Assembly: GCA_963924565.1 (NCBI GenBank)
Contig: OZ004613.1
Span: 14,694,001-14,758,000 of the forward strand
Direction: 5' to 3'
DNA length: 64,000 nucleotides
DNA from: Ascidiella aspersa
Lineage: Eukaryota
Part shown: piece by piece, positions 4,096 to 64,000 of the stretch
How positions within the stretch are numbered: the first letter of the stretch is position 1
How the letters are laid out: every line of letters starts with the position of its first letter
Position numbers and translations under genes: made by a program
Notes under the pieces: model-generated
The model's input: only the letters and a program-made list of their open reading frames with translations
What the model was told of the DNA's origin: nothing
Database searches by the model: none

Positions 4096-6843
4096 TTTTC
4101 TATAGAAATCGCCCCAGAAGAAGGCACCGTGTGCGATAAGGTAGGATATTTGTCGTTCTTGATTAGTAAATAAAATTTTTTGAGTTTGGTTTCTTAAAAG
4201 TAATTTTTGCCAGTTTATGTTATCGTCCGAGTTTTGCATTTTTATTGAAGTTTCTTGGGCCGTAATTTCGTTTAAAGTTTGGTATATGGTTTTTAATTTA
4301 GATTTGTTCCAATCGAATTCACTGTTTTGAACTTCAATTTTTTGGTAGTTATCCAGCACAAATTGCCAAGTTTTTTTTTTTTTTTTTCTTTTTGGGTATG
4401 AGTTGTTGAATAATTTGGCGTTTATTTTTCTAATTTTAAAGCTAATCTGATACAATGACCAGTTGTGGTATATTTCAATTGGTTTAGTTATTCGACTAAG
4501 GTATCGGATTCTTTCCATTTGAGCCGCCGTAAATTTGTTTTGAATGATGATCATTTTTAAACCTCCTTTGTTAATGTTAGATTCTAATTTTCTGCGTTTT
4601 AGAGGCTGCAATCTTTGGGGGTGCCAGAGAAATTTATTTATTAAAAATTGAAATTCCTTAATGAGTTCCTTAGTTGGTATTTTTATTCTAGCTATATGAA
4701 TTATTTTGGAAACTAATAGAGAGTAGATGATAGTAATTTTTCCAAACATTGTTAAATTTAAATTTTCGTATTTTTTGATAATTGCTATAATTTGACCTCG
4801 GACCAGATCCCAGTTTGGTTTGTTATTATTGTTGTTTTCATTATAAATTATTCCGAGGATTTTAATTTGGTTGGTGAAGAATTGATTATATTTAGGAAAT
4901 AACAACGATTTGAAGCTTTGGACAAGTGTTAGTATTTTGGTTTGATTTAAAATTTGGCCCGTAATTTGTTCATATTTATCCAATTATTTAAAAAGTTGCG
5001 TAATTGAATTTTGGTCAGTGACAAAAAAAGTATTGTCATCTGCGTATTGTTGTAATTTTAAAGTGTTTGTTCCAATTTTGAATCCTTTTATTGTCCACCA
5101 ATGCAGATATATAAGAGCATGGATAGGGAGCAGCCCTGACGGACTCCTCTTTTTATTTTAATTTCGTCTGAATTTTGGCCGTTAATTTCTATTTTACTAA
5201 TTATGTTTTTATATAGGATAGAGACCCATTTGATTAGATTTTCCTACGGATTCTAAAAATCAGATTGTGGTCAGCGCGATCGAAAGCTTTTTCAAAGTCC
5301 GTAATTAGTAGTGCCAAATTGGTGTTTTTTTCCCTACTGAATTCTATCGCCGAATTTATATTGTAATGTATTTCTTGCATTTGTCGAGATTTAAGGCCAC
5401 ATTTTTGTGCCGTGTCAATTTGGTTATCTATTTGTAGTATTAGTCTATTTGAGATTATTTTGCTTAGAATTTTGTAGTCTGTATTTAGTAAAGAAATGAG
5501 TCTCCAGTTAAATTGCCAATTTCATGTTATCTGTCATTTCATCAAGAATTAAGAGTGATTGAAAGGTTTTATAAAATTCGCTGGAAAGTCCGTCAGAGCC
5601 TGGAGTGGAATTATTATTTAGTGAATTTATTGCTAATATTATTTTATTTTTGGTTATATAAGGGGAGTTATTATCGTTGTTATTTACTAATTAATCTAGT
5701 ATTTTTTTTGTTCTTGGTAATTTATCTGGTTGTTTGTTGCCCAAAGATTGGAGTAAAATTGGTGTATGGTGTTTTTGATTTCGTCTGGGTGTGTTGTTGT
5801 TTGGCCTGCGTTGTTTTTTAGTTGGTATATTCCTGTTTTTGTTTGGTTGGATTTCTCTAGCGAGAAGAAATCTTTAGTCGGTTTTTCGTTGTTTCCAATA
5901 TTTTTTGTACGAGACCTAATTTTGTGTCCTTGGTGTTTTTGCGTTTCTATTTTTTTTAGTTCTTGTATGATTTGTTGGTGTCTTTTGTTTATATTGGGGT
6001 TGTTTTGTTGAAGGAGGTTTATGGTGCGTTCTAGTTGTTGCTTTAGGTTTTGTTCGGTCTTTCTTTCTTGTTTAATCTTGTATTTTGACAATTTTATTGT
6101 GTGGTTTTTGATCCTTTTTTTTTAATTGTTCCCACCATTCTAGTTTATTTTCTAGAGTATTTTCGTCCTTAAATTCATGTATAAGTTTTTCAATAGACAT
6201 CCGGTAAAATTTGTCCTGTAATAGTGAATTGTTTAATTTTCAGTAGCTTTTGCCGTATTTTTTATTTTTGTTGATTTGGATCGTGATGGTTGGAGATTGG
6301 TTATGGTCTGTAAATAAGGCTAGGTTGTGGTATGAGTTTTTTATTTTTTGTATCAAGGGGGCGGCGACATAGATTCTGTCGATCGATCCGGGTTGCGGAT
6401 CGACTTGTTACGTGTGTGTAGATTTTTTTTTTTTTAAGGGTCAATAATATTAAAACGTTGTTTGATTTCTTTCCAATTTTTTGCATCCATTCTAGTCTGG
6501 GTAATTCTGGTCATTGTATCGATTTGTTCGTATGTAAAGTTAAAATCTCCTAGGATAATTATGTTTTTGGTGTCAAGGTTAGAAATATACTTGGCAATTT
6601 GATTTTGCTGTTGTTTTCTAATTGTAGGTTTAGCGGGATTGAAATACAAATTTATTATGATAATTTTTTCGTTTTGGTGTTGGTTTAGAAGTTCTAAACA
6701 GTGAATTCTATTTTGTTCTATAATTTTTGTGAAATTTGGCCTAGTTTTTTCCTAATTCCTTGTATGTTTAATGTTGCTATATTTAATTGTTGCAGATGCG
6801 GGTTGAATGGAGTTGCGGAGGGGAAGAAAAAAACCGACTACAT
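4096..6843 (-). pseudogene. Family C ORF2 (APE-RT), copy 1, frameshifted
   Basis: ILGDFN, TRIDR, WKLNNSLL, DFEKAFD, GVRQGCSLS, YADD, GGL motifs. Confidence 0.9.
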
Positions 6844-6844
6844 T

Positions 6845-8050
6845 TTAGGAGACTGTATGGTTGAAAACCCCACTTGGAGGTCCGGGATTTATAGATGGCG
6901 AAAAAACTGAAGGATCAGATGGGGAGAGGGATCTTGATCTTGTTCTTGATTTGTTACGTTGTTTTTTTCATTTCATCGGCTGATCCGGAACTTCTGTCGC
7001 TTTTGGTGGTCGGGGTCGAAGTGTGCTCTGGTTCTTCCGGTAGGGTTGAGGAGATTTTTTTGGTTGCTGGTTGTTAATTTTTTTCCGTTCCAGGTCTTTA
7101 ATTTGCAGTTTTGCCAGTTTGTGTACGGGGGTTAAGATGTGGTCTTTTTCAACCGGTGTGGGTGAGGTAGGTGGACGGTCATCAGACCGTTCCGAAGACA
7201 AATAGAAATCGTCTTCTTCGTCAGATGAGGAAGGTGTATCAGACAACAGAATTACTGGTGGGTCCTCATTTTGTGTTCTAGGCTGGGTTATGATTATGGG
7301 GACCGTGATGTCCGAAGGGTCTCTCCACCAGAGCTACCTGCTTTATTTTTTTTCCGAGAGTCTACGACTTGTAATAGGTTATTAATTTGCGCCGTCTGCG
7401 TCAGTGGAGGGAAGTTTTGGGCATTGATAATCGGTGATGTATTGGTGGGTGGTGCTCGGTCGCCATTGGGGCATCTGTTTGCCCAGTGACCCCGTTCTCC
7501 ACATTTACGGCATTCTGTGGGTCCTTGTTTTTGTCCAGGTTTAATGATTCGGATGCGATTTCCGAATATGACTACCTCGTCCTGGATGTTTTCCATATTT
7601 ATTTTATCCATGTATAAGTGATAGAATCCATTTCGTATATGGGGGAAATTTCGGTGGGTGCAAGGGGTTATTCTCTTAAGTGTGCCCCAATTAAAGATTT
7701 TAGCAATGTCCTGCAGGTGCTCGAGTTCCCACTCACATGGTACGGGTACGAGTGTAATTTTAGTGAGGGGTTTTGGCGGTTCCATACTGGTTAGATTGAT
7801 CAGTTGATTTTGAAAGTAGAATCTTTTTCCGGATATTAGTTCATGATGAATATTAATTTTGTCACATAGATTGTTGAAAGTTAATTGGAATACTTTATGA
7901 AGTCGACTTATAGTGCGACATCCTAGTATTTCCGTTTGAATGGATTTAAAGGGCTCATGAGAGGATATAAGGTTTAAGCAATCTTCTAAGGTGAACTCAT
8001 CGGGTGAGTCAGCTTTAATGTCAATTGTCTTCGACAAGAAGGCTTTCAGA
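6845..8050 (-). pseudogene. Family C ORF1, copy 1
   Basis: GCRTISR, EPPKPLTKITLVPVPCEW, CRKCGERGHWANRC; ~170-bp internal deletion at ~7320 relative to copy 2. Confidence 0.85.
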
Positions 8051-8172
8051 AGTTGTCATGACGGTTATATCATGATAGTAGTAAATAGTTACGAAAGTAT
8101 ATATATAAATATGCTGTTGATACCAGGTATAGTATATTTAAAACAGGTTCCTCTGGCAATATATATTATTTT

Positions 8173-8222
8173 CTACCAACGTTTCGGCTTGCTATCCGGC
8201 AAGCCTACGTCAGGGACTGACA
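8173..8222 (-). ncRNA. Hammerhead motif in the 3' pLTR, core mutated (CTGACGT)
   Basis: Reverse-complement copy of 9191-9240, with perfect stem II GGCTTGC/GCAAGCC and GAAACGTTGG. Confidence 0.6.
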
Positions 8223-9190
8223 CACAAAGCCAACAAGACACAAAGTAAAATCACAATAAGAAAAAAGGAGATAAAAATGTGCGAGACGCGTTCAAAATTC
8301 TCAGCGATAAAACAACGTTCAAAATATAAAGCGATAAGACAACGCGCAATTTAGAGGTTATCTTTTAGCACCTGTCGGTACGGCGCTGGAAACAAAACGT
8401 CCGTTTTGATATTCATCGTATCCGGCGTTCGGTGTATCTGCCAGGATTCGCGAAACAGATGTTTTCGGTAGTCGCTCTCTCTAGCAAGAACAGTGCCCCC
8501 ATCGAAATTAATATCGTGTAGACGACTGCAAGCGTGCTGCGCCAAGGCTGACTTCTTGGCGTCGTTGTTGTTCACATCGCGAATATGCTCTTTCACCATC
8601 GGGCAATCGCCGCATGGAATTGTATAAATGACGCCCTTCGTGTTGTTGACGTCTATTGGGTCTTTAGGATGAGACAGCAAGTGGCGTAACGTTGTAATAG
8701 GTTTTACACCAACTGCGATGCCGAAGTCCCGTAACAGGCGCCGCAGGACGTCCGTCAGGCCTGGAATATACGGTAAGGTAACGTACCCTTCCCATTTGGT
8801 ATCAGTAGGTGAGTTTGTCGTTGAGGTTGCACGGCTGTTGTCTCAGTAAGGACTCGCGAACCCGTCGAAGCTCCTCCTCTAACACGCCCGGTTCCGAGGT
8901 TAACCGCCTGGCCTGATCGAACAGCGCCGTTACCACTCCCCGCTTCTGGTATACAGGATGGTGAGACGTTAAGTTCAGGTACCTCCGTGTGCTCGTTGGT
9001 TCTCATCACCTGTACATCTAAAAATGGAAGTTTCCCATTAACCTGCTCCTCCATAGTGAAGATTATACTGGGCTCTAAGCTGTTTAAATGGGTAAGGAAC
9101 GCGCCCACCAGATGCGTTTCGAAGATGGCGAAAGTGTCGTCCACATAGCGTTTCCAAAATCTGGGAGGGTCAAGAAAGGTTGGCTTGTGT

Positions 9191-9240
9191 GTCAGTCCCT
9201 GAAGAAGGCTTGCCGGGATAGTAAGCCGAAACGTTGGTAG
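9191..9240 (+). ncRNA. Minimal type I hammerhead ribozyme motif in the Penelope pLTR
   Basis: CTGAAGA (9199-9205), stem II GGCTT(GC)..(GT)AAGCC, GAAAC-GTT-GG. Confidence 0.75.
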
Positions 9241-10745
9241 AAAGTGTATATATGTTGTCAATGTAGTCGGTTTTTTGTTTGTGGTGCGTGCACTTTTGGT
9301 TAACAGTCGAAAAAGCGCTAGGTGGCGCTTTTAAATATAAGGGTTTCGCCGATTAAAGGCGAAAGATATACACACAAAAAATATTACAAGGGCTACGGTA
9401 TGAAAAGTTTAAAGCGAACACTAAGGGGCAGTATATAACGAAAAATTTGGCAAGGGCTTCTCGCCCTTTATACAAAAACCTCTCGCGGCGGGGCCATCAA
9501 AGCCAATCAATTACGTCTTTTTTTTTTTTTTTGCATAGTTATCAGATATTTGAGTACAAGTCCTAAGGGAAGATTCCCCTCGTTGTATTGATCGTATTTT
9601 GGATATCATCATATTAACTATGCCTTCGGCCGCGCCGGTGTACCATGTCTATTTTATTTCAAACCACACCATATATACAACGGATAGAAAAAAAAAGGTT
9701 TTGCACCAAAATAAATTGAAAACATAACATAGTATGGGTATTGTTTAGTGATATTACCAGTTTTGGTAAACATGTGGAAAACAATAAAAAATTAAGGGGG
9801 GAGAAGAGGAAAAAAAAAAAAGAAAGGGGAGGGAGGCAGTAATTATATAGCTAGTTCAAGTTATAAAAATAAAGAAAATACGAAACAAAAAAAAAGAAAC
9901 AAACAACAGAAACGAAAAAGAAAGTTCATCATTATGTTTTAGTTAGAAGTATATATAACATGTTGTATTATATTTACAGGTTCAAAGAAGAGGAGGAAGA
10001 CAGAGCAGCAGCTAAAAGCTCCTCCGGGCCCGCGATATCAAGGATCTCGTTCGCCTTTGTACAGCCGAATTTTTGGGTGAGATCTGATATAAAATTTTTG
10101 AATTTACAAATAATCTTATTTGTTATGTCCTGTTCAGTTTGCGTTTGATTAAATACGTATTCATTTCTGGTTTCTAAATTGGTCTTATAGTCAATTAGGG
10201 TTGCTTTAGTTTGTTGGAGAATTTTTAAGTTAATTGTATAATCTTGGAAATCTGTTAAATTTTGGTTGAAAAGGATACTGTCACGGTCCGGTAGGAAATT
10301 TTGATTATAGTTATTTAGAGTAAATTGGTTTATGTTTTGGATAATGTTTTTTTGTTAATTCGCATTCTATCATTATGTGTTCTATGTTGTCAGTGTGCTT
10401 TTGGCAGAAATTACAATTTAGTTTTATTATGTTGCCAATTTTATTTCTAAAAATTTGTTGTTGTCTATTAAAATCGCCCCAAAAGAAGCCATTGTGGGCA
10501 ATTTTATAACTAATTTGTTTTTCATAATTGCTGTATATATTTGTTTTTTTGTCAGTTTTGAGTAATAATTTGTTCCATGATATCTCTTTATTGTTGTTTG
10601 TAAGTTTTAGTTGTGTTTTGATGGAAGTAATGTTGTTGAGAGTGTTATATATGTCCTTAAATTCAGAATTTTCCCAGTCAAAAGTGTTTTCATATTCATT
10701 AATTTTTTCATAATTTTTCCAAATAAAGGTCCATTTTGGGTTGGG

Positions 10746-15474: not shown

Positions 15475-18400
15475 TTCGGACGGGTCGTTTTGGGTAATTA
15501 TTATTGAATATTTTTGGGTTTATCTTTCTAATTTTAAAGGCAATTAGTCGTGAAAAATTTGGTTCGGAGTTTCTATGGTTATTATATATCGAATTCTTTC
15601 GAGTTGTGCAGCTGTGATTTTGTTTTGTAGATTTATCATTTTAAGTCCTCCTTTATTTAAATCGGTTTCTAATTTTCTCCTGCTTATGGGTTCTAGAAGT
15701 TGGGGGTGCCATAGGAATTTGTAGATTAGTTTTTCAAATTCTTTGATGATTGTTTTTTCAGGAATGATGATTCTGGATATATGTATTATTTTGGATATTA
15801 TAAGTGAATTAATTATGTTGATTTTTCCTATCATTGTTAAATTTAAGTTTTTGTATTTTTCGATTACCCAATAATTTGACCGCGTTCCAATTTAATTGTT
15901 TGTTAGCGTTGGATTCGTTGTATTTTATTCCTAGTATTTTGATTTGGTCCGAAATATGTGAGTTATATTTGGGAAATAAAAGCGATTTAAAATTTTGGGC
16001 AAGTGTTAGTATTTTGGTTTTGTTTTTGTTGAGTGTTTGTCTTCTGATTTTTTCGTACGTATCTAGTTCCTTAAAAAGTTGTTGTATTGAATTTTGGTCC
16101 GAGATAAAAAAAGTGTTGTCGTCCGCATATTGTTGTAATTTGATTGTGTTATTTCCTAATTTTGTCCCTTTTATTTCAGAATTGGATGCAAATATGTAGA
16201 GAATCATAGAAAGTGAACACAGCCCTGACGGACGGACTCCTCGTTGGATTTTAATTTCGGGTGAGTTTTTACCGTTAATTTTAATTTTACTTATTATATT
16301 GTTATATAAGATAGAGACCCATTTTATAGTATTCTCATCAACCTGAAATTTGGTGAGAATTTTTTGGATTAGTTAATGATCTGCTTTGTCGAAAGCTTTT
16401 TCAAAATCTGTTATTATTAGTGCCAAGTTTGCGTGTTTTTCCTTACTATATTCAATTGCCGAGTTATTATTATAATGCATTTCTTGCATTTGTCTTGATT
16501 TTAGGCCGCATTTTTGGGATTGGTCAATTTGGGGCCGCAATTTATTTGTAATAATTTTGCTTAGTATTTTGTAATCTGTATTAAGGAGAGAAATGGGTCG
16601 CCAGTTTTTAATGTTATTTAAATCGCCTTTTTTAGGTATAAGTTTAGTTATAGCTAATTTCATATTATCCGTCATTTCGTTTTGGAGAAAAATGTTTACG
16701 TAGAGTTCGAATAGGTCGTTAATTATGGTTTTATAAATTTTTTTATAAAATTCGCTTGTAAGCCCGTCAGAGCTGGGGGACGAGTTGTTGTTTAGAGATT
16801 TAATGGCCGAAATTATTTCTACTTTTTGTATATAAGGGGATGTTACTATATTTTTATCAGGGGTATTGCAGTCGCTTTGATTTCCCAATTGGTTAAGTAC
16901 CTGTTGTTGTTTTATTTCATCTATTTTGTTTTGTTGTCCCCATAATTCCGTATAGTAGTTGTGTATTATTTTTTCAATTTTTCATGTTTTGTTTCAATTT
17001 TTAATTGGTTTATTCCTGTTTTCGTTTGGTTTTGTTGCTCTATACGGAAGAAATTTTTGTTTGGATTTTCACTATTTCCTATGTTTTTGATCCGCGATCT
17101 GACTTGTTGTCCCTGTAATTTGTTTTCTTCGATTTTATTAATTTGATTTATTATGTGTTTGTATTCGAGATTTAATTGCAAGTTGTCTGATGACAGTGAG
17201 TTTGTGATGTTCTTAAGTTGGTGTTGTAGATTTTTCTCGTGTTGTTTTTCTCGTTTTGATTTGTATTTCGAGTATTTTATTGTGTGGTTTTTTATTCTTT
17301 TTTTGAGTTTTTCCCACCACACAAGTTTATTTATTTCAGTAGATTCTAAGGTAAAGTCTTTTATTAAGTTTTGTATAGAGTCGCAGTATTTTTTATCTTC
17401 TAAAAGTGAATTATTAAATTTCCAGAAGGAATTGCCTTGTCGCTTTGTTTTATTTAGTTGTAGGGATATGTTTGGTGATTTTGTGTGATCGGAGAAAGTT
17501 ATGGGTATGTAGTTTGCATTTTTTATTATTGATTCGCTTACGTATATTCTATCGATTCTTGTGGCTGATTTGGCGGTTACGAAAGAGAATTCTTTGCCAT
17601 TCGGGTTTTGGTTTCTATATGCTTCAACTAGGTTTAGTCTGGTTACTAAATGAGTGATGGTGTCTTTTTGGTTATATATGAAATTAAAATCTCCTAAAAT
17701 GATGTTGTTTTTATTTTTTAAATTAAGTATGTGCTGTTCGAGTTTGTATGTGTCCGGATTTAAAGTGGGTATTAAAAATTGTGATAGTTGAAGTATTATT
17801 TTTAGTAGTTAGTGTTAAAGAGTGGATTCTGTTTTGTATTATTATATTGTGTTGCGTATTAAAATGTTTTTTTATTTTAGGGTTTATTAAAAGAATGGTG
17901 CCGGTTCCTGCCACGTACGGATGTATTTGGTGAGTTAAGTTTTGTTTGTTTGTTTTTATATAGTTTGCAATTTTGTCTAATTTTTTCCGTATTCCGCGTA
18001 TGTTTAAAGATGCTATATTTATTTGTTCATTTAGGTCCGAGTCAAGGCCAGGAGGGAGAGAAAGGGGAGAAGGAAAGGTAAGTAATTTATGTTGTGTCGT
18101 TTGGTGTCTTTTGTTTTCCTGGAGCAGATAAAAACTTCCCGTATAGTGAAGATTTTCCGCAGGTTTTTGTTATTTTGCCTTTCCGTTTTTATTAGAGGGT
18201 GTTTCCGTTCTTCCTCTTTTGGTTTGTGTAGATGTGTTGTCTTCAGTTGGGGGGTCGTTGGTTGGAGGTTGATTTTCTTCTCTTTGTTGATCGTTGTCGC
18301 ATGGTAGGTTATCCGCTTCGTTCTCTTTATCAGGAGAAATGTCTGCGTCAGAGCATTTTTCGGTTGTTACGGTTGATTCGTTTTCTTCAATTGGTACAAG

Positions 18401-58479: not shown

Positions 58480-59767
58480 AACCTTCCGCAATAAAATTAC
58501 TAAATTTAAAATAAACTAGAAAACAAAAAAGTAACAATTTAAGAAATCGCCGTTACTTTCTTGTACTACTATTATATATAATAAGCCTTCCGCTAACGCT
58601 ATAAGCAGCAAACTTGACATATTCTTCGTTTCAGGTCATGGCTCCAATCTGCTCTGCACAAATCAGTTTTTTGAAGTGCAGTACCCTACGACAAATAAAC
58701 GTCCGACTTGCAAGCTACCGATTGTCGAACGAAATTACCACGTGCTTGATCAGAGCACACTCAAAATCGCGCAGGCACACACGCATTTGCATTGCAACAA
58801 ACGACTCAAACCCGAGTTTCATGTTTGACCATGGTTTGACCTTTTTTTTACTCGTGCACAAGTCGAACAAACCAAAAAGTAGTTTAAGGATCCAAAACGA
58901 TTATAACGTTCGTTATGCGCCCCGGTTTATGCGCAGAACGCTATATGAAGGCTAAATGTGTGTAGAGAAACGCGTCTCCTATTTCGGCGTCTTAAACAAC
59001 ACACGCAGTTTGTATTTGAAACTTATTGATGAAATGAACGAAGAATCAAAGCTGGCACAATTCAAGGAGACGGTTTCTACACAAAGGCAACGTGTCAAAA
59101 CATTTCACATGTGGTACGAATTCAAATATTATGCTCACCAACTATTTGGGGGAACCGGGAGAAGTAATCAGCGTCACTTACTTATCAAACGCCTAAATAA
59201 AACAAGCAATTTAGCAAACAAGGCCTCATTATGACGTCACACATATAAACATAAACTTACCAAGACTTAAAGTTAAACAAATGAAGACAAGAAAGAGTGA
59301 GATGTCACTCTGACAAAGTTCACAAGAAAAGGCACTGCAAAACAAGAGCAGTGTCAATACTACATAAAAGACGTTATCTTATACACGAAGCCATATTTCT
59401 AGGCGAACTGACTACTTGCGGTAGTAAATTTAGCAAATGTTACTTTACATGTTGACATATTATTGACATATTGACATATTACCAAGGTTGCAAAACCACA
59501 TTATACACAACGCAACTCACCAAGAATAATCTTTGGTGTAACAAATACTTCAGTTTAAACAAAACGGCAGCAATACAACTTCCACCACGACAATCAATGT
59601 CTCATAGAATTCGGTAATTACTGGCAAATACGATGTAACAACGATCTTGATCGATAATTGCGCTCGGCCTTACCAATCGCCCCCTAAACAGTAAAATCGC
59701 CCCCAATTTCAAAAATTGTACAAATCGCCCCCGCAATGGCCAAAATCGCCCCCGTTGAAGAACACTG
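57326..59767 (-). mobile_element. hAT Buster/Charlie-type transposon, 3' end deleted
   Basis: TIR CAGTGTTCTTCAAC at 59767; flank CCCTAGAA fits the nnnTAnnn target; four AATCGCCCC subterminal repeats (59675-59753). Confidence 0.9.
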
Positions 59768-61081
59768 CCCTAGAAGACTGCCTAAACCTCATATCCTCAC
59801 ATGAGCCGTTTAAATCTATTCAAACGGAAATACTAGGATGTCGAACTATAAGCCGACTCCATCAAGTATTTCAATTAACCTTTAACATATTCACCAAGAA
59901 CTAATATCTGGAAAAAGATTCTACTTCCAAAATCCATTAATCAATCTCACCAGCATGGAACCTCCAAAACCACTCACAAAATTAACACTCGTACCCGTAC
60001 CATGTGAGTGGGAACTCGAACACCTACAGGACATTGCCAAAATCTTTAACTGGGGTACACTTAGAGAATAACCCCTTGCACCCACCGAAATTTCCCCCAT
60101 ATACGTAACGGATTCTACCATTTATTCATGGAAAAAATAAATATGGAAAATATCCAAGACAAAGTAATGATATTCGGAAACCGCATCCGAATCATTAAAC
60201 CCGGACAAAATCAAGGACCCACTGAATGCCGAAAATGTGGAGAACAGGGTCACTGGGCAAATAGATGTCCCAATGGTGACCGAGCACCACCCGCTAATAC
60301 ATCCTCGATAATCAATGCTCAAAACTTTCCTCCACTGACGCAGACATCCCAAATTAACAACCTAATAAAAGTAATAGACTCTCGAGAAAAAAATAAAACA
60401 GGTAGCTCTGGTGGAGAGACCCAAAAAACCCCACCCAAAAACCCTTTTCAAAAATATGCGGAGGAGCATGGGCACAGAATGTTAAATAAAACACCCCCAC
60501 CCCGATCCCCACCTCCCCAACATACAACAACACCGCCCCCACCTCCACCACCTCCACCAGAAAAAAACCCCGACCCCAAAGACCCGGGACCTTCGGACAT
60601 TACGGCCCCCATAAACACAACCCAATCTGGAACACAAAATGAAGACTCACCGGTAATCCTTCTGTCTGACACACCTTCCTCGTCTGACGAAGAAGACGAC
60701 TTCTACTTGTCTTCGGAACGGTCTGATGACCGACCATCTACTTTATCCACACCGGTTGAAAAAGACCATATCTCAACCCCCGTACGTAAACTGACAAAAC
60801 TTCAAATTAAAGACCTAGAACGAAAAAATTTTTTAGCACAAATAGAAGAAGAAAACAATGAAGAACCAACCAGTAAAAAAATCTCCTCAACTCTACCGGA
60901 AGAACCAGAACACACCTCGACCCCGACCACCAAAAGAGACAGAAGTTCCGGATCAGCCGATGAAACGAACAAAAAACAACGTAACAGATCAAGATCCACC
61001 TACCCATCTGATCCATCAGTTTTTTCACCATCAGTAAATCCCGGACCTCCAAGTGGGAATTTCAACCACACAGTCGCCTAA
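59768..61081 (+). pseudogene. Family C ORF1, copy 2
   Basis: LEDCLNLISSHEPF, PVPCEW, CRKCGEQGHWANRC, Pro-rich and acidic tail. Confidence 0.88.
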
Positions 61082-64000
61082 AATGTAGTCGGTTTTTTTC
61101 TCCCCTCCGCAACTCCCTTCAACTCGCATCTCAAACAATTAAATATAGCAACATTAAACATACAAGGAATTAGGAAAAAACTAGACCAAATTTCTCACTT
61201 TATTACAAAAAATAACTTGGACATCCTTACCCTGCAGGAAACCAACCAATTTAATCATACAATATTTAACAATTGGGCGCAAACAAATCAAATAAAACCC
61301 TATCTTAACATCCAAATCACCCCAAAAATACAAGGCACCGGCACCATTTTTCTCGTAAACCAAAATATAACAAATTATTACCAAATCACCCACAAAATTA
61401 TAGAACAAAATAGAATTCACTGTTTAGAACTTCTAAACCAACACCAAAACGAAAAAATTATCATAATAAATTTGTATCTTAATCCCGCTAAACCTATAAT
61501 TAGAAAACAACAGCAAAATCAAATTGCCAAGTACATTTCAAACCTCGATACCAAAAACATAATTATCCTAGGAGATTTTAATTTTACATACGAACAAATC
61601 GATACAATGACCAGAATAACCCAGACTAGAATGGATGAAAAAAACTGGAAAGAAATTAAACAACGCTTTAATCTTACTGACCCCTATAGAAAACTAAACC
61701 CGGACGAAAAAACCTACACACACGTTACAAGTCGATCCGCAACCCGGATCGACAGAATCTATGTCGCCGCCCCCTTGATACAAAAAATAAAAAACTCATA
61801 CCACAACCTAGCTTTATTTACAGACCACAACCAATCCCGAACCATCACGATCCAAATCAACAAAAATAAAAAATACGGCAAAAGCTATTGGAAATTGAAC
61901 AATTCTTTATTACAGGACAAATTTTACCGGATGTCTATTGAAAAACTTATAAATTAATTTAAGGACGAAAATACTTTAGAAAATAAACTAGAATGGTGGG
62001 AACAATTAAAAAAAAGGATCAAAAACCACACAATAAAATTCTCAAAATACAAGATTAAACAAGAAAGAAAGACCGAACAATACCTAAAGCAGCAACTAGA
62101 ACGCACCGTAAACCTCCTTCAACAAAACGACCCAAATATAAACAAAAGACACCAACAAATCATACAAGAACTAAAAAAAATAGAAACGCAAAAACAAGGA
62201 CACAAAATTAGGTCGCGAATAAAAAATATTGGAAACAACGAAAAACCGACTAAAGATTTCTTCTCGTTAGAGAAATCCAACCAAACAAAAACAGGAATAT
62301 ACCAACTAAAAACAACGCAGGCCAAACAACAACCAGACGAAATCAAAAAAACTATACACCAATTTTACTCCAATCTTTGGGCTACAAATAACCAGATAAA
62401 TTATCAAGAACAAAAAAAAAATACTAGATCAATTAGGAAATAACAACGATAATAACTCCCCTGAAAAAAATTTAGATAACTTCCCTTATATAACCAAAAA
62501 TGAAATAATATTAGCAATAAATTCACTAAATAATAATTCCACTCCAGGCTCTGACGGACTTTCCAGCGAATTTTATAAAACCTTTCAATCACTCTTAATT
62601 CTTGATCTAACCGACCTATATACAAACATTTTTATCCAAAAAGAAATGACAAATAACATGAAATTGGCAATTACTAAATTGATACCAAAAAAAGGTGACC
62701 TTAACTTAATAAAAAACTGGAGACCCATTTCCCTAACTAAATACAGATTACAAAATTCTAAGCAAAATAATATCAAATAGACTAATACTACAAATAGATA
62801 ACCAAATTGACACAGCACAAAAATGTGGCTTTAAATCTCGACAAATGCAAGAAATACATTACAATATAAATTCGGCGATAGAATTCAGTAGGGAAAAAAA
62901 CACCAATTTGGCACTACTAATTACGGATTTTGAAAAAGCTTTCGATCGCGCTGACCACAATCTGATTTTTAGAATCCTCCACAAATTCAAAGTAGAGGAA
63001 AATCTAATCAAATGGGTCTCTATCCTATATAAAAACATAATTAGTAAAATAGAAATTAACGGCCAAAATTCAGACGAAATTAAAATAAAAAGAGGAGTCC
63101 GTCAGGGCTGTTCCCTATCCATGCTCCTATATATCTGCATTGGACAAGTGCTAGCAAAACTAATAAATAACAACCGGCAAATAAAAGGATTTAAAATTGG
63201 AACAAATACTTTTTTTGTCACTGACCAAAATTCAATTACGCAACTTTTTAAGGAATTGGATAAATATGAACAAATTACGGGCCAAATTTTAAATAAAAAT
63301 AAAACCAAAATACTAACACTTGTCCAAAGCTTCAAATCGTTGTTATTTCCTAAATATAATCAATTCTTCACCAACCAAATTAAAATCCTCGGAATAATTT
63401 ATAATGAAAACAACAATAATAACAAACCAAACTGGGATCTGGTCCGAGGTCAAATTATAGCAATCATCAAAAAATACGAAAATCTAAATTTAACAATGTT
63501 TGGAAAAATTACTATCATCAACTCTCTATTAGTTTCCAAAATAATTCATATAGCTAGAATAAACATACCAACTAGGGAACTCATTAAGGAATTTCAATTT
63601 TTAATAAATAAATTTCTCTGGCACCCCCAAAGATTGGAGCCTCTAAACCGCAGAAAATTACAATCTGACATTAACAAAGGAGGTTTAAAAATGATCAACA
63701 TGCAAAATAAATTTACGGCGGCTCAAATGGAAAGAATTCGATACCTCACTCGAATAACTAAACCAACCGAAATATACCACAACTGGTCATTGTATCAGAT
63801 TAGCTTCAAAATTAGAAAAATAAACACCAAATTATTCAACAATTCATACCCAAAAAGAAAAAAACCCAACCAAACTAGGCAATTTGTGCTAGATAACCAC
63901 CAAAAAATTGAAGTTCAAAACAGTGAATTCGATTGGAACAAATCTAAATTAAAAAACATATACCAAATTTTAAACGAAATTACGGCCCAAGAAACTTCAA
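61082..64000 (+). pseudogene. Family C ORF2, copy 2 (APE open; RT frameshifted, YADD deleted)
   Basis: NIATLNIQG, LQET, ILGDFN, TRIDRIY, TDH; DFEKAFD; GVRQGCSLS. Confidence 0.9.

What the first reader, a model, noticed from the sequence alone, without database searches (positions are those of the whole stretch)
6828..9276. Perfect 17-nt inverted repeat bracketing ORF1 of family C: candidate long-range RNA switch for ORF1/ORF2 translation
Seen: AAAAAACCGACTACATT (sense; 9276-9260) lies directly before the ORF1 start once the Penelope insertion is removed. Its exact complement AATGTAGTCGGTTTTTT begins at the first base after the ORF1 TAA (6844-6828) and is conserved in copy 2 (61082-61098). Inference: the duplex would loop out ORF1 and bring the 5' leader next to the ORF2 start, which could support shunting, reinitiation or readthrough. 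I know of no description of this in L1/Tx1. Six of the 17 pairs are an A/T run, which weakens the chance argument.
Basis: partly seen in the sequence, partly recalled or inferred. Interest (0 to 1): 0.8.

Follow-up and report, generated by a model that had tools for sequence, protein, structure and literature searches.

The report
RNA fold-back bracketing a jumping gene's ORF1
A perfect 17-base match between the leader of a rare, now-dead LINE jumping gene and the bases right after its first gene's stop codon is real and probably lets the RNA fold back on itself, but whether this controls production of the second protein is still untested.

Summary
The 17-nt arms lie at 9276-9260 and 6844-6828 (minus strand is the sense strand), and the second arm recurs at 61082-61098. 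Arm 1 belongs to the family's leader: an independent copy elsewhere on the chromosome, without the 1.1-kb insertion, has both arms 17/17. There, arm 1 ends 54 nt before the probable ORF1 ATG. Arm 2 starts at the first base after the ORF1 TAA.

New points:
- **Reading frame:** in 3 of 4 copies ORF2 has no ATG of its own and continues in the ORF1 frame after that single TAA. Readthrough is therefore the most natural route to ORF2.
- **A set of helices:** the repeat is one of six nested long-range complementary pairs in this family, far above shuffles.
- **Covariation in one of them:** one pair in ORF2 (H6) shows three compensatory double changes across three related families.

Against a role for the 17-mer itself:
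- It never varies (6 of 6 instances identical), so covariation cannot be tested.
- Its arms are no better conserved than their flanks.
- Four relatives (E, G, K, r36) show no counterpart; in r36 the arm 1 stretch is absent.
- No RNA reads covered it.

Verdict: a real, non-chance feature and probably an RNA helix. A translational role is plausible but unproven.

The parts
9260..9276 (-). Arm 1 of helix H1, in the 5' leader of family C copy 1 (sense AAAAAACCGACTACATT)
   Evidence: The same 17-mer lies at the same leader position in copy 3 (L035 8097-8113). It is predicted mostly unpaired in the leader folded alone.
6828..6844 (-). Arm 2 of H1 in copy 1, starting at the first base after the ORF1 stop
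   Evidence: 17 of 17 pairs with arm 1 appear in the MFE fold of the native 2877-nt RNA.
61082..61098 (+). Arm 2 of H1 in copy 2. This copy is 5'-truncated at about 59760 and has no leader.
6845..6847 (-). ORF1 stop codon TAA of copy 1. In copy 2 it is at 61079-61081 on the plus strand.
   Evidence: TAA is the ORF1 stop in 4 of 4 copies. ORF2 continues in the same frame in copies 2, 3 and 4. Copy 1 has one extra T in the T-run.
8057..8059 (-). Probable ORF1 ATG of copy 1. The frame is broken soon after in copies 1 and 3.
   Evidence: The GTCATGACAAC context is shared by copies 1 and 3 and by relative L037.
8107..9239 (-). Insertion of about 1.13 kb of a multi-copy repeat into the leader. It is flanked by a 14-nt duplication at 9253-9240 and 8106-8093.
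   Evidence: inverted repeats I1 and I2. It is absent from copy 3. There is no Pfam or Rfam match.
9277..9517 (-). Upstream part of the leader and promoter-like region (TGACGTAA, CCAAT-like and TATAAA motifs read by eye). 9517 is where homology with copy 3 begins in copy 1, because another element's poly(A) abuts there.
   Evidence: Copy 3 and relative r36 stay homologous for at least 400 nt further upstream, so the true 5' limit of the unit is not settled.
6741..6753 (-). A-run (AGGAAAAAACTAG, codons of GIRKKL) that can pair locally with the U-run of arm 2. It is a possible alternative partner.
   Evidence: The local stem starts 6 nt after the stop, and its fold energy is not better than shuffles.
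6688..6712 (-). H2 5' arm (in the endonuclease domain, NRIHCLEL). It pairs with 4311-4335.
   Evidence: I3: 25 nt, 92%. The same pair occurs in copy 2 at 61409-61433 / 63910-63934 (I4). Both arms are identical in copies 1-3.
4311..4335 (-). H2 3' arm (after the RT domain, EVQNSEFD)
   Evidence: It differs from the E-like homologue at 14 of 28 positions, against roughly a quarter in the flanks (my count on the alignment).
6583..6601 (-). H3 5' arm. It pairs with 4359-4377.
   Evidence: I10: 19 nt, 89%. The 13-nt perfect core occurs only in copy 1; copy 2 has one mismatch.
4359..4377 (-). H3 3' arm
6507..6520 (-). H4 5' arm. It pairs with 4449-4462. In copy 2 the pair is 61601-61614 / 63783-63796.
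   Evidence: 14 of 14 pairs appear in the MFE fold of copy 2.
4449..4462 (-). H4 3' arm
5740..5753 (-). H5 5' arm. It pairs with 4606-4619, with one mismatch in copy 1. In copy 2 the pair is 62368-62381 / 63626-63639.
4606..4619 (-). H5 3' arm
5673..5693 (-). H6 5' arm. It pairs with 4889-4909. In copy 2 it is an 18-nt perfect pair at 62433-62450 / 63336-63353.
   Evidence: (I7, I8). Covariation with families E and G is shown.
4889..4909 (-). H6 3' arm (codons of KSLLFPKY in the RT)
16872..16888 (-). H6 5' arm in the related family E element of this window. It pairs with 15969-15985.
18170..18172 (-). ORF1 TAA of the family E element, with ORF2 also in the same frame behind it

Best explanation
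**What it is.** Family C is a low-copy, now defunct LINE with an APE endonuclease and a reverse transcriptase (L1/Tx1-like). In its ancestral layout ORF1 ends at a single UAA, and ORF2 has no AUG and continues in the same frame.

**Proposed helix.** In the RNA, 17 nt of the 5' leader pair with the 17 nt that directly follow that UAA. This helix (H1) would close ORF1 into a loop of roughly 1.3 kb or more. It would be the outermost 5' member of a set of nested long-range helices that organise this family's RNA.

**Proposed role.** Because of where it sits, H1 most likely acts on ribosomes arriving at the ORF1 stop. Once the first ~8 pairs are inside the ribosome, the remaining CGG + U6 part would stand at the mRNA entrance, about where known readthrough stimulators begin. 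That could favour readthrough into ORF2 and give a little ORF1-ORF2 fusion beside much ORF1 protein. The same U-run can instead pair with a local A-run, so a two-state switch is conceivable.

**Shown here:** the sequence facts, the in-frame layout, the excess and nesting of complementary pairs, and covariation in H6.

**Inferred:** that H1 forms in vivo, that it is under selection, and that it affects readthrough.
For: - **Exact repeat in the leader.** It is exact and lies in the leader in 2 of 2 full-length copies, which have different 5' flanks.
- **Not chance for this pair of regions.** No shuffle reached the observed score: 0 of 300 and 0 of 300.
- **Energetics.** The duplex is -21.6 kcal/mol and 17 of 17 pairs are in the MFE fold of both native RNAs. 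It is also the predicted interaction when leader and inter-ORF pieces are co-folded as two molecules (17 H1 pairs, gain -24.9 kcal/mol).
- **In-frame layout.** 3 of 4 family C copies, and relative E, have ORF2 in frame behind the single TAA. The Exo_endo_phos domain starts 23 codons after the stop, and the first Met lies deep in the domain.
- **Family-wide excess of long-range complements.** Copy 2 has 5 perfect runs of 12 nt or more against 0.88 expected, and 3 of 14 nt or more against 0.10. Copy 1 has 4 of 14 nt or more against 0.11, though 2 of those 4 are the insertion's own inverted repeat.
- **Nesting.** H2 to H6 are strictly nested.
- **H6 is kept across families C, E and G.** Three pairs changed on both sides. 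The covariation score is 0.190 against 0.085 in shuffles (0 of 500 reach it). 90.5% of cells are paired, against 36-50% when the partner is slid. The changes in the 3' arm are synonymous in KSLLFPKY.
- **H2's 3' arm diverged faster than its flanks.** It differs from the E-like homologue at 14 of 28 positions, about twice the flank rate.
- **Correlation, n = 1 each.** K has its own ORF2 AUG and no helix. E has UAA-C and no helix. C has UAA-A and the helix.
- **Weak cross-element hint.** The best helix between the L037 leader and the c5/c6 inter-ORF falls at the homologous site, with G-C where C has A-U (p about 0.02).
Against: - **No covariation for H1.** The exact 17-mer occurs 6 times in the genome, 2 in leaders and 4 after the stop, all identical.
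- **Arms not better conserved than flanks.** Arm 2 has 1 of 17 variable columns against 15 of 121 in the flanks. Arm 1 has 0 of 17 against 8 of 81.
- **No significant counterpart in relatives.** E p = 0.24; G p = 0.13 and r36 p = 0.61; K p = 0.91. r36 lacks the arm 1 stretch altogether.
- **Arm 1 in relative L037.** It differs at 5 of 17 positions, about the background rate.
- **Composition.** Six of the 17 pairs are A-U from an A-run and a U-run.
- **Spacer.** H1 starts 0 nt after the stop. The stems described in PMC3159437 (passages read) start 7-12 nt after it.
- **Stop context.** UAA followed by A is not one of the leaky contexts quoted there.
- **Scanning.** Ribosomes scanning the leader must open arm 1.
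- **No expression seen.** The bins covering arm 1 (9180-9520), arm 2 and ORF1 (6220-8069) had depth 0. Only 58 RNA reads were laid in all, from about 6% of run X3.
- **All copies are broken**.
- **No close relatives in other organisms.** ORF1 gave no hit and the RT at best 35% identity.
Confidence: 0.4

Rival explanations
1. The helix forms and is selected, but its job is architectural and has nothing to do with translation. Together with H2 to H6 it compacts the RNA. That could serve RNP assembly, cis-preference, stability or complete reverse transcription. Its position next to the stop codon would then be incidental.
For: - H2 to H6 lie wholly inside ORF2 coding sequence, where no recoding event is expected, yet they are as strong as H1.
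- H6 is conserved with compensatory changes.
- The intact relative G has its own 16-nt perfect long-range pair, nested outside H6.
- H1 has an atypical 0-nt spacer for a readthrough stimulator (PMC3159437, passages).
Against: - H1 brackets ORF1 precisely. One arm starts at the first base after the stop, which a generic compaction role does not predict.
- Relatives E, G and K do without an ORF1-closing helix.
Confidence: 0.2
2. The complementary patches are a mutational by-product. During copying of the folded RNA or cDNA of the master element, short template switches wrote or corrected one arm from the other. The repeats then mark past physical proximity and have no present function.
For: - The 3' arm of H2 differs from the E-like homologue at 14 of 28 positions, about twice the flank rate, and changes the protein sequence. 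It reads like an inverted copy of the conserved 5' arm with 2 changes.
- Several perfect runs occur in one family, while relative E has none above 12 nt.
- Templated correction would also imitate compensatory change.
Against: - Arm 1 shows no cluster of changes against L037: 5 of 17, the background rate, with no indel.
- The first 9 nt of arm 2 are shared with r36, c5 and c6, so they are old and not a fresh patch.
- H6 has kept pairing through three families at 65-75% identity, with synonymous changes.
- I have no direct evidence for such switches over 0.9-2.5 kb.
Confidence: 0.2
3. H1 is a chance match that copies 1 to 4 inherited from one master element. An A-run happens to face a U-run, plus 11 mixed bases.
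For: - Six of the 17 pairs are A-U run.
- The sequence is AT-rich (GC 0.35-0.38).
- There is no covariation and no extra conservation.
- Relatives lack it.
Against: - No shuffle of the two regions reaches the score: 0 of 300, maximum 31 against 39.
- Perfect inverted runs of 16 nt or more anywhere in the element occur in 0.01 per shuffle.
- Both perfect pairs of 17 nt or more, more than 50 nt apart, among the 25 pairs listed for the whole window are from family C.
- The placement at the base after the stop codon is specific.
Confidence: 0.15

Closest known systems
Long-range RNA-RNA interaction required for stop-codon readthrough in tombusviruses (PRTE-DRTE; Cimino et al. 2011, PMC3234231, abstract read)
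   Same: A complementary pair kilobases apart. One partner lies next to a stop codon that separates an upstream protein from an in-frame polymerase. A switch with mutually exclusive structures has been proposed.
   Different: - In the virus the distal partner is 3', at the end of the genome. Here it is 5', in the leader.
- In the virus the proximal partner sits in a stem-loop. Here it is the sequence directly after the stop.
- The virus case is proven by mutation and compensation. Nothing is tested here.
- The host is an animal retrotransposon, not a plant virus.
Readthrough stimulated by an extended 3' stem (alphaviruses, tobraviruses, Drosophila hdc and kelch; MuLV pseudoknot; Firth et al. 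2011, PMC3159437, passages read)
   Same: An in-frame downstream ORF, a stem of 10-14 bp or more, and arms that may be 100-270 nt apart. The G-C part of H1 begins at +9 after the stop.
   Different: - Those stems start 7-12 nt after the stop and both arms lie downstream.
- H1 starts at +1 and its partner is upstream, across the whole of ORF1.
- The stop context is UAA-A.
ORF2 translation in other LINEs: SART1 UAAUG coupling with a downstream structure, and human L1 unconventional termination/reinitiation (review PMC5972666, passages read)
   Same: The same problem: getting ribosomes from ORF1 into ORF2 on one RNA. RNA structure near the junction matters in SART1. The review itself raises 'looping' to bring the ORF1 stop and the ORF2 start together.
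   Different: - Those elements have an ORF2 AUG.
- In family C the only nearby AUG, 1 nt after the stop, is out of frame in 3 of 4 copies and is followed at once by UAG.
- No leader-to-junction pairing is described in the passages I read.
Genome-scale long-range pairing in retroelement and viral RNAs (Ty1 in-vivo structure PMC7969010, and tombusvirus large-scale folding PMC7498350; search listings only)
   Same: Several distant segments of a replicating RNA pair to form large closed domains.
   Different: Those are LTR elements or viruses with known roles in cyclisation, transcription or packaging. I found no LINE example.

Membership tests
Programmed stop-codon readthrough with a 3' RNA stimulator | The downstream ORF is in the same frame behind one stop and lacks its own start | tested here: met
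   copies 2, 3 and 4 (3 of 4) and relative E. Copy 1 has one extra T. The first Met lies deep in the endonuclease domain.
Programmed stop-codon readthrough with a 3' RNA stimulator | A stable stem starts about 7-12 nt after the stop | tested here: inconclusive
   H1 starts at +1, with its CGG core at +9 to +11. A local alternative stem starts at +7, but its fold is not better than shuffles (z -0.3 to -1.0). The spacer range comes from PMC3159437 (passages).
Programmed stop-codon readthrough with a 3' RNA stimulator | A leaky stop context (for example stop-CAA-UUA or UGA-CGG) | tested here: not met
   Family C has UAA-AAU-GUA. Relative E has UAA-CAA-AAA. The motif list comes from PMC3159437 passages and from recall.
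Programmed stop-codon readthrough with a 3' RNA stimulator | Compensatory substitutions in the stem | tested here: inconclusive
   All 6 instances are identical. The only hint is cross-element.
Programmed stop-codon readthrough with a 3' RNA stimulator | A fusion protein or measured readthrough | not testable with these tools
   No protein data. No RNA reads on the region.
Long-distance RNA-RNA interaction controlling recoding (Tombusviridae type) | Complementary segments far apart, one of them next to the recoding site | tested here: met
Long-distance RNA-RNA interaction controlling recoding (Tombusviridae type) | The distal partner lies downstream, in a 3' replication element | tested here: not met
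   The partner is in the 5' leader.
Ribosome shunt (CaMV 35S type) | A short uORF ends just before the 5' base of the stem, and an AUG follows the landing site | tested here: not met
   There is no AUG in the copy 3 leader upstream of arm 1 (sequence printed). The only uORF lies after arm 1. There is no in-frame ORF2 AUG. The definition is recalled.
Termination-reinitiation (SART1 or L1 type) | An ORF2 start codon at or near the ORF1 stop | tested here: not met
   The AUG 1 nt after the stop is followed by UAG and is out of the ORF2 frame in copies 2-4.
APE-type LINE (L1/Tx1-like) | ORF1 with a CCHC knuckle; ORF2 with an APE endonuclease and a reverse transcriptase | tested here: met
   zf-CCHC 9.2e-05, Exo_endo_phos 8.3e-13, RVT_1 8e-12. 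Clade (Tx1 or L1) was not tested.
Penelope-like element (the insertion) | A GIY-YIG endonuclease or PLE reverse transcriptase, and hammerhead ribozymes | tested here: inconclusive
   No Pfam hit at E up to 5 and no Rfam hit at E up to 0.1. It is a multi-copy repeat with inverted ends. A hammerhead-like core was seen by eye only.

The most novel reading that the evidence does not exclude
A LINE family makes its ORF2 enzyme as an ORF1-ORF2 fusion by reading through a single UAA. A long-range pairing between the 5' leader and the bases right after that stop would set how often this happens, possibly toggling with a local stem. The pairing would be part of a selected, nested long-range fold spanning the whole RNA of a clade of these ascidian LINEs. 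H6 covariation is the first evidence for that fold.
Probability: 0.2. Interest if true: 0.8.

Novelty: new variant of a known kind. Interest (0 to 1): 0.55.

Why it matters
How LINEs get ribosomes from ORF1 into ORF2 is still only partly understood, and the known answers differ between elements. Here, related families in one genome show three junction types:
- an in-frame single stop (C and E);
- a +1 overlap (G);
- a separate AUG (K).

The family with the in-frame stop in a non-leaky context carries a strong leader-to-stop pairing. If that pairing tunes readthrough, it would be a virus-like recoding control in an animal retrotransposon, with the unusual feature that the distal partner lies in the 5' leader.

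Separately, the nested helices, and the compensatory changes in H6, suggest that LINE RNAs can carry selected long-range structure inside coding sequence. My four literature searches did not find this described for LINEs. It can be tested directly by probing and by comparing sister species.

Tried and rejected
**Cross-species covariation.** ORF1 found no homologue among 1720 candidates. The RT found 24 proteins, the best at 35% identity. That is too distant to be useful.

**More family C leaders in this genome.** Only 4 loci exist: copy 1, copy 3, r36 and L037. r36 lacks the arm 1 stretch. L037 has no inter-ORF of its own.

**c5 and c6.** These copies carry arm 2 with a terminal T>C change. 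They proved to be 5'-truncated, ORF1-only derivatives without a leader.

**RNAduplex on whole regions.** It gave a sprawling, meaningless interaction. I replaced it with an ungapped helix score.

**Extra conservation of the arms.** Including copy 4 inflated the flank variability, because its 5' flank is a junction. With copies 1-3 only there is no excess.

**Local post-stop stems in C and E.** They are present but not better than shuffles.

**H6 in more distant families (51-55% amino-acid identity).** It is absent.

**Host RNA match for the 17-mer.** Matches with 2 or fewer mismatches (202) were fewer than for the reversed control (407).

**RNA-seq.** No reads on the leader, ORF1 or inter-ORF.

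**My early reading corrected.** I first took ORF2 to be in the +1 frame, with an in-frame AUG-UAG 'start-stop'. That came from copy 1's extra T and was corrected.

**Literature.** Searches found no LINE with readthrough or leader-junction pairing. I did not open any supplementary files. I recall, without a source in hand, that some fish L1-like elements have in-frame ORFs separated by one stop.

Full report
**1. Observation**

The 17-mer AAAAAACCGACTACATT occurs exactly three times in the window: 6828-6844 (+), 9260-9276 (-) and 61082-61098 (-). None of 100 shuffles gave three matches.

The element's sense strand is the minus strand for copy 1 and the plus strand for copy 2. Read in sense, arm 1 is at 9276-9260 and arm 2 at 6844-6828. 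Arm 2 follows the ORF1 TAA (6847-6845) without a gap. In copy 2 the TAA is at 61079-61081 and arm 2 starts at 61082. Complementarity ends exactly at 17 nt.

**2. Is arm 1 part of the element?**

Yes. The stretch upstream of the insertion (9260-9460) has only four matches in the 308-Mb genome.

One match, copy 3 (L035, same chromosome, about 177 kb away), is contiguous. There the leader runs straight into ORF1 with no insertion, and both arms are 17/17.

Copies 1 and 3 have different sequence 5' of GACGTAATTG (window 9517). In copy 1, another element's poly(A) abuts that point.

The insertion in copy 1 is about 1.13 kb (9239-8107). It sits between a 14-nt duplication, and its end is a multi-copy repeat. 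I could not confirm it as Penelope.

In copy 3 the probable ORF1 ATG begins 55 nt after the last base of arm 1. A two-codon uORF lies at +41.

Copy 2 is 5'-truncated near 59760, so it says nothing about arm 1.

One caveat on the 5' limit. Copy 3 and relative r36 remain homologous for at least 400 nt upstream of GACGTAATTG. So either the unit is longer than it looks in copy 1, or these are site-specific insertions sharing a target. Earlier notes of this scan describe such site-specific LINEs in what one note calls a sea-squirt genome; I did not verify the organism. Either way, arm 1 lies about 190 nt downstream of the TATAAA motif and upstream of ORF1.

**3. The family**

Pfam gives a CCHC knuckle in ORF1, and Exo_endo_phos and RVT_1 in ORF2.

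Only seven loci match the inter-ORF stretch, five of them on the same chromosome between about 14.23 and 14.76 Mb. All copies examined are broken.

The exact 17-mer occurs six times in the genome: two leader arms and four post-stop arms.

**4. The junction**

In copies 2, 3 and 4 the endonuclease domain (…LNIATLNIQGIRKKL…) is in the same frame as ORF1, behind the single TAA. Copy 1 has one extra T in the T-run.

The frame after the stop carries Exo_endo_phos from residue 23. It has no Met until deep inside the domain.

The AUG one base after the stop is out of frame and is followed at once by UAG.

Relative E (window about 19450-15400) has the same in-frame layout, with a different post-stop sequence. 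The intact relative G has ORF2 in the +1 frame, overlapping ORF1 by about 50 nt. The intact, more distant K has a 56-nt spacer and its own ORF2 AUG.

Readthrough is therefore the simplest route to ORF2 in families C and E. This is inference from layout, not a measurement.

**5. Would the helix form?**

- The duplex is -21.6 kcal/mol.
- In the minimum-energy fold of the native copy 1 RNA (2877 nt, insertion included) and the native copy 3 RNA (3692 nt), 17 of 17 pairs are present.
- Arm 1 is predicted mostly unpaired in the leader folded alone (mean 0.79).
- The U-run of arm 2 pairs locally with an A-run about 80 nt downstream, so the 3' half of arm 2 has unpaired probability near 0.
- When the two pieces are co-folded as separate molecules, H1 forms with a gain of 24.9 kcal/mol.
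- The local stem starts 6 nt after the stop in copies 1, 2 and 3, but its fold is not better than shuffles.

**6. More than chance?**

For the leader against the inter-ORF region, the best ungapped helix scores 39. Shuffles give 21.7 +/- 2.7 (maximum 31; 0 of 300 reach 39). Copy 3 gives the same score, and 0 of 300 shuffles reach it.

Among the 25 inverted pairs listed for the whole window (arms up to 3.5 kb apart), two are perfect, at least 17 nt long and more than 50 nt apart: this one and an 18-mer. Both are in family C.

**7. A wider pattern**

Family C carries other long-range complements that recur in its copies. Coordinates are for copy 1.

| Helix | 5' arm | 3' arm | Note |
|---|---|---|---|
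| H2 | 6712-6688 | 4335-4311 | 25 nt with 2 mismatches; identical in copies 1-3 |
| H3 | 6601-6583 | 4377-4359 | 13-nt perfect core only in copy 1 |
| H4 | 6520-6507 | 4462-4449 | |
| H5 | 5753-5740 | 4619-4606 | |
| H6 | 5693-5673 | 4909-4889 | 18 perfect in copy 2 |

Sources.

Copy 2 has 5 perfect runs of 12 nt or more against 0.88 in dinucleotide shuffles, and 3 of 14 nt or more against 0.10.

H2 to H6 are strictly concentric, and H1 forms a separate domain in front of them.

In the MFE fold of copy 2, 18 of 25 (H2), 14 of 14 (H4), 14 of 14 (H5) and 18 of 18 (H6) pairs appear.

Both arms of each helix lie in coding sequence. For H2 these are NRIHCLEL in the endonuclease and EVQNSEFD after the RT.

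**8. Covariation**

I aligned seven elements of three families: C x3, E x3 and the intact G. For H6:
- 18 pairs, with 90.5% of cells paired;
- 3 pairs changed on both sides;
- covariation score 0.190, against 0.085 in shuffles (0 of 500 reach it) and at most 0.063 when the partner is slid.

With three lineages this amounts to two or three events. The 3' arm changes are synonymous in KSLLFPKY, while the 5' arm lies in a variable linker.

H6 is absent in families at 51-55% amino-acid identity.

G has its own 16-nt perfect pair, between the end of the endonuclease and the WxLYQI region after the RT. That is the region used by the 3' arm of H4 in family C.

H2's 3' arm differs from its E-like homologue at 14 of 28 positions, about twice the flank rate (my count on the alignment). 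This fits either selection for pairing or templated change.

**9. What speaks against a role for H1 itself**

- H1 never varies.
- Its arms are no better conserved than their flanks among copies 1-3: 1 of 17 variable columns against 15 of 121 for arm 2, and 0 of 17 against 8 of 81 for arm 1.
- The best leader x junction helix is unremarkable in E (p 0.24), G (0.13), r36 (0.61) and K (0.91).
- r36 has lost the arm 1 stretch. L037's arm 1 equivalent differs at 5 of 17 positions, and its own junction is missing.
- There is one hint the other way. The L037 leader against the c5/c6 junction pairs best at the homologous site (p about 0.02), with G-C where C has A-U. But these are different elements.
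- c5 and c6 are ORF1-only derivatives.
- The first 9-11 nt of arm 2 (AATGTAGTC…) are shared by C, c5, c6 and r36 while the flanks differ. This could equally reflect post-stop context or coding.
- RNA run X3 gave 58 laid reads from about 6% of the run, and the bins covering the leader, ORF1 and junction had depth 0.

**10. Mechanism**

I favour a selected helix that acts at the ORF1 stop. A ribosome with UAA in its A site has taken in roughly the first 8 nt of arm 2. The remaining CGG + U6 helix then stands where the stems described in PMC3159437 begin (7-12 nt spacers; passages read).

Long-range pairing needed for readthrough is established in tombusviruses (PMC3234231, abstract read), but there the partner is downstream.

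Shunting and reinitiation fail their defining features here (see Membership tests).

I hold the translational role at about 0.3 and any selected pairing at about 0.5. The confidence of 0.4 is for the combined statement, taking its weaker half as inference.

**11. Literature**

Searches found no LINE with readthrough or leader-junction pairing.

The review PMC5972666 (passages read) describes SART1 coupling and L1 reinitiation, and mentions looping as a possibility.

PMC5893793, PMC7498350 and PMC7969010 were seen as search listings only.

**12. Verdict**

This is a new variant of a known kind, of moderate interest. The more solid by-product is the nested long-range pairing, with covariation in H6.

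Noticed in passing
window 6712-4311 (copy 1) and 61409-63934 (copy 2): Five concentric long-range complementary pairs (H2-H6) lie inside ORF2 coding sequence of family C. They are far above shuffle expectation. H6 is conserved with three compensatory changes across families C, E and G.
   Followed up: yes
L079+L080 (G000:C7:14765300-14769500), positions 2172-2187 / 4150-4165: The intact relative G has its own 16-nt perfect long-range pair between the end of the endonuclease domain and the WxLYQI region after the RT. It is nested outside H6. The 3' arm of H4 in family C uses the same region with a different partner.
   Followed up: partly
window 18170-18172; L079 1322-1374; L085 (sense) 2261-2321: Related LINE families in one genome use three different ORF1/ORF2 junctions: an in-frame single TAA (C and E), a +1 overlap of about 50 nt without an AUG (G), and a 56-nt spacer with its own AUG (K).
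   Followed up: partly
L035 (minus strand) and L036, upstream of GACGTAATTG; window 9517: Copy 3 and relative r36 share at least 400 nt of homologous sequence upstream of the apparent 5' end. The junction sits in a TTACGTC-N4-GACGTAA palindrome, followed by CCAAT-like and TATAAA motifs. Either the unit is longer than it looks, or these are site-specific insertions into a common target.
   Followed up: partly
L077 (minus) about 8745-7180; L078 about 6327-6549: c5 and c6 are 5'-truncated ORF1-only derivatives. They keep the TAA and arm 2 (last T changed to C), then skip ORF2 and end in the family's 3' region.
   Followed up: partly
window about 6735 and 4088-3070: Copy 1 lacks about 184 nt at the start of ORF2 that copies 2-4 have. 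Between 4088 and 3070 it carries about 1 kb not shared with them, including an ORF1-like fragment at 3761-3552.
   Followed up: no
G000:C7 about 14.23-14.76 Mb: Five of the seven loci matching the family C junction lie within about 0.5 Mb of one chromosome. Copies 1 and 2 are each followed by a D-type element that is only 78% alike, against 86-89% for the C parts.
   Followed up: no
window 8076-8065 (sense ATCATGATATAA): A two-codon uORF (AUG AUA UAA) lies 14 nt before the probable ORF1 AUG. It is present in copies 1 and 3.
   Followed up: no
window 8107-9239: The inserted repeat has inverted ends (32 and 28 nt arms) and a hammerhead-like CUGAAGA...GAAAC core seen by eye. Most of the RNA reads laid fall on it, including an opposite-strand joint at 8131/8170.
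   Followed up: no
window 9340-9319 (sense AAAAGCGCC ACCT AGCGCTTTT): A short leader hairpin is conserved in copies 1 and 3, r36 and L037.
   Followed up: no
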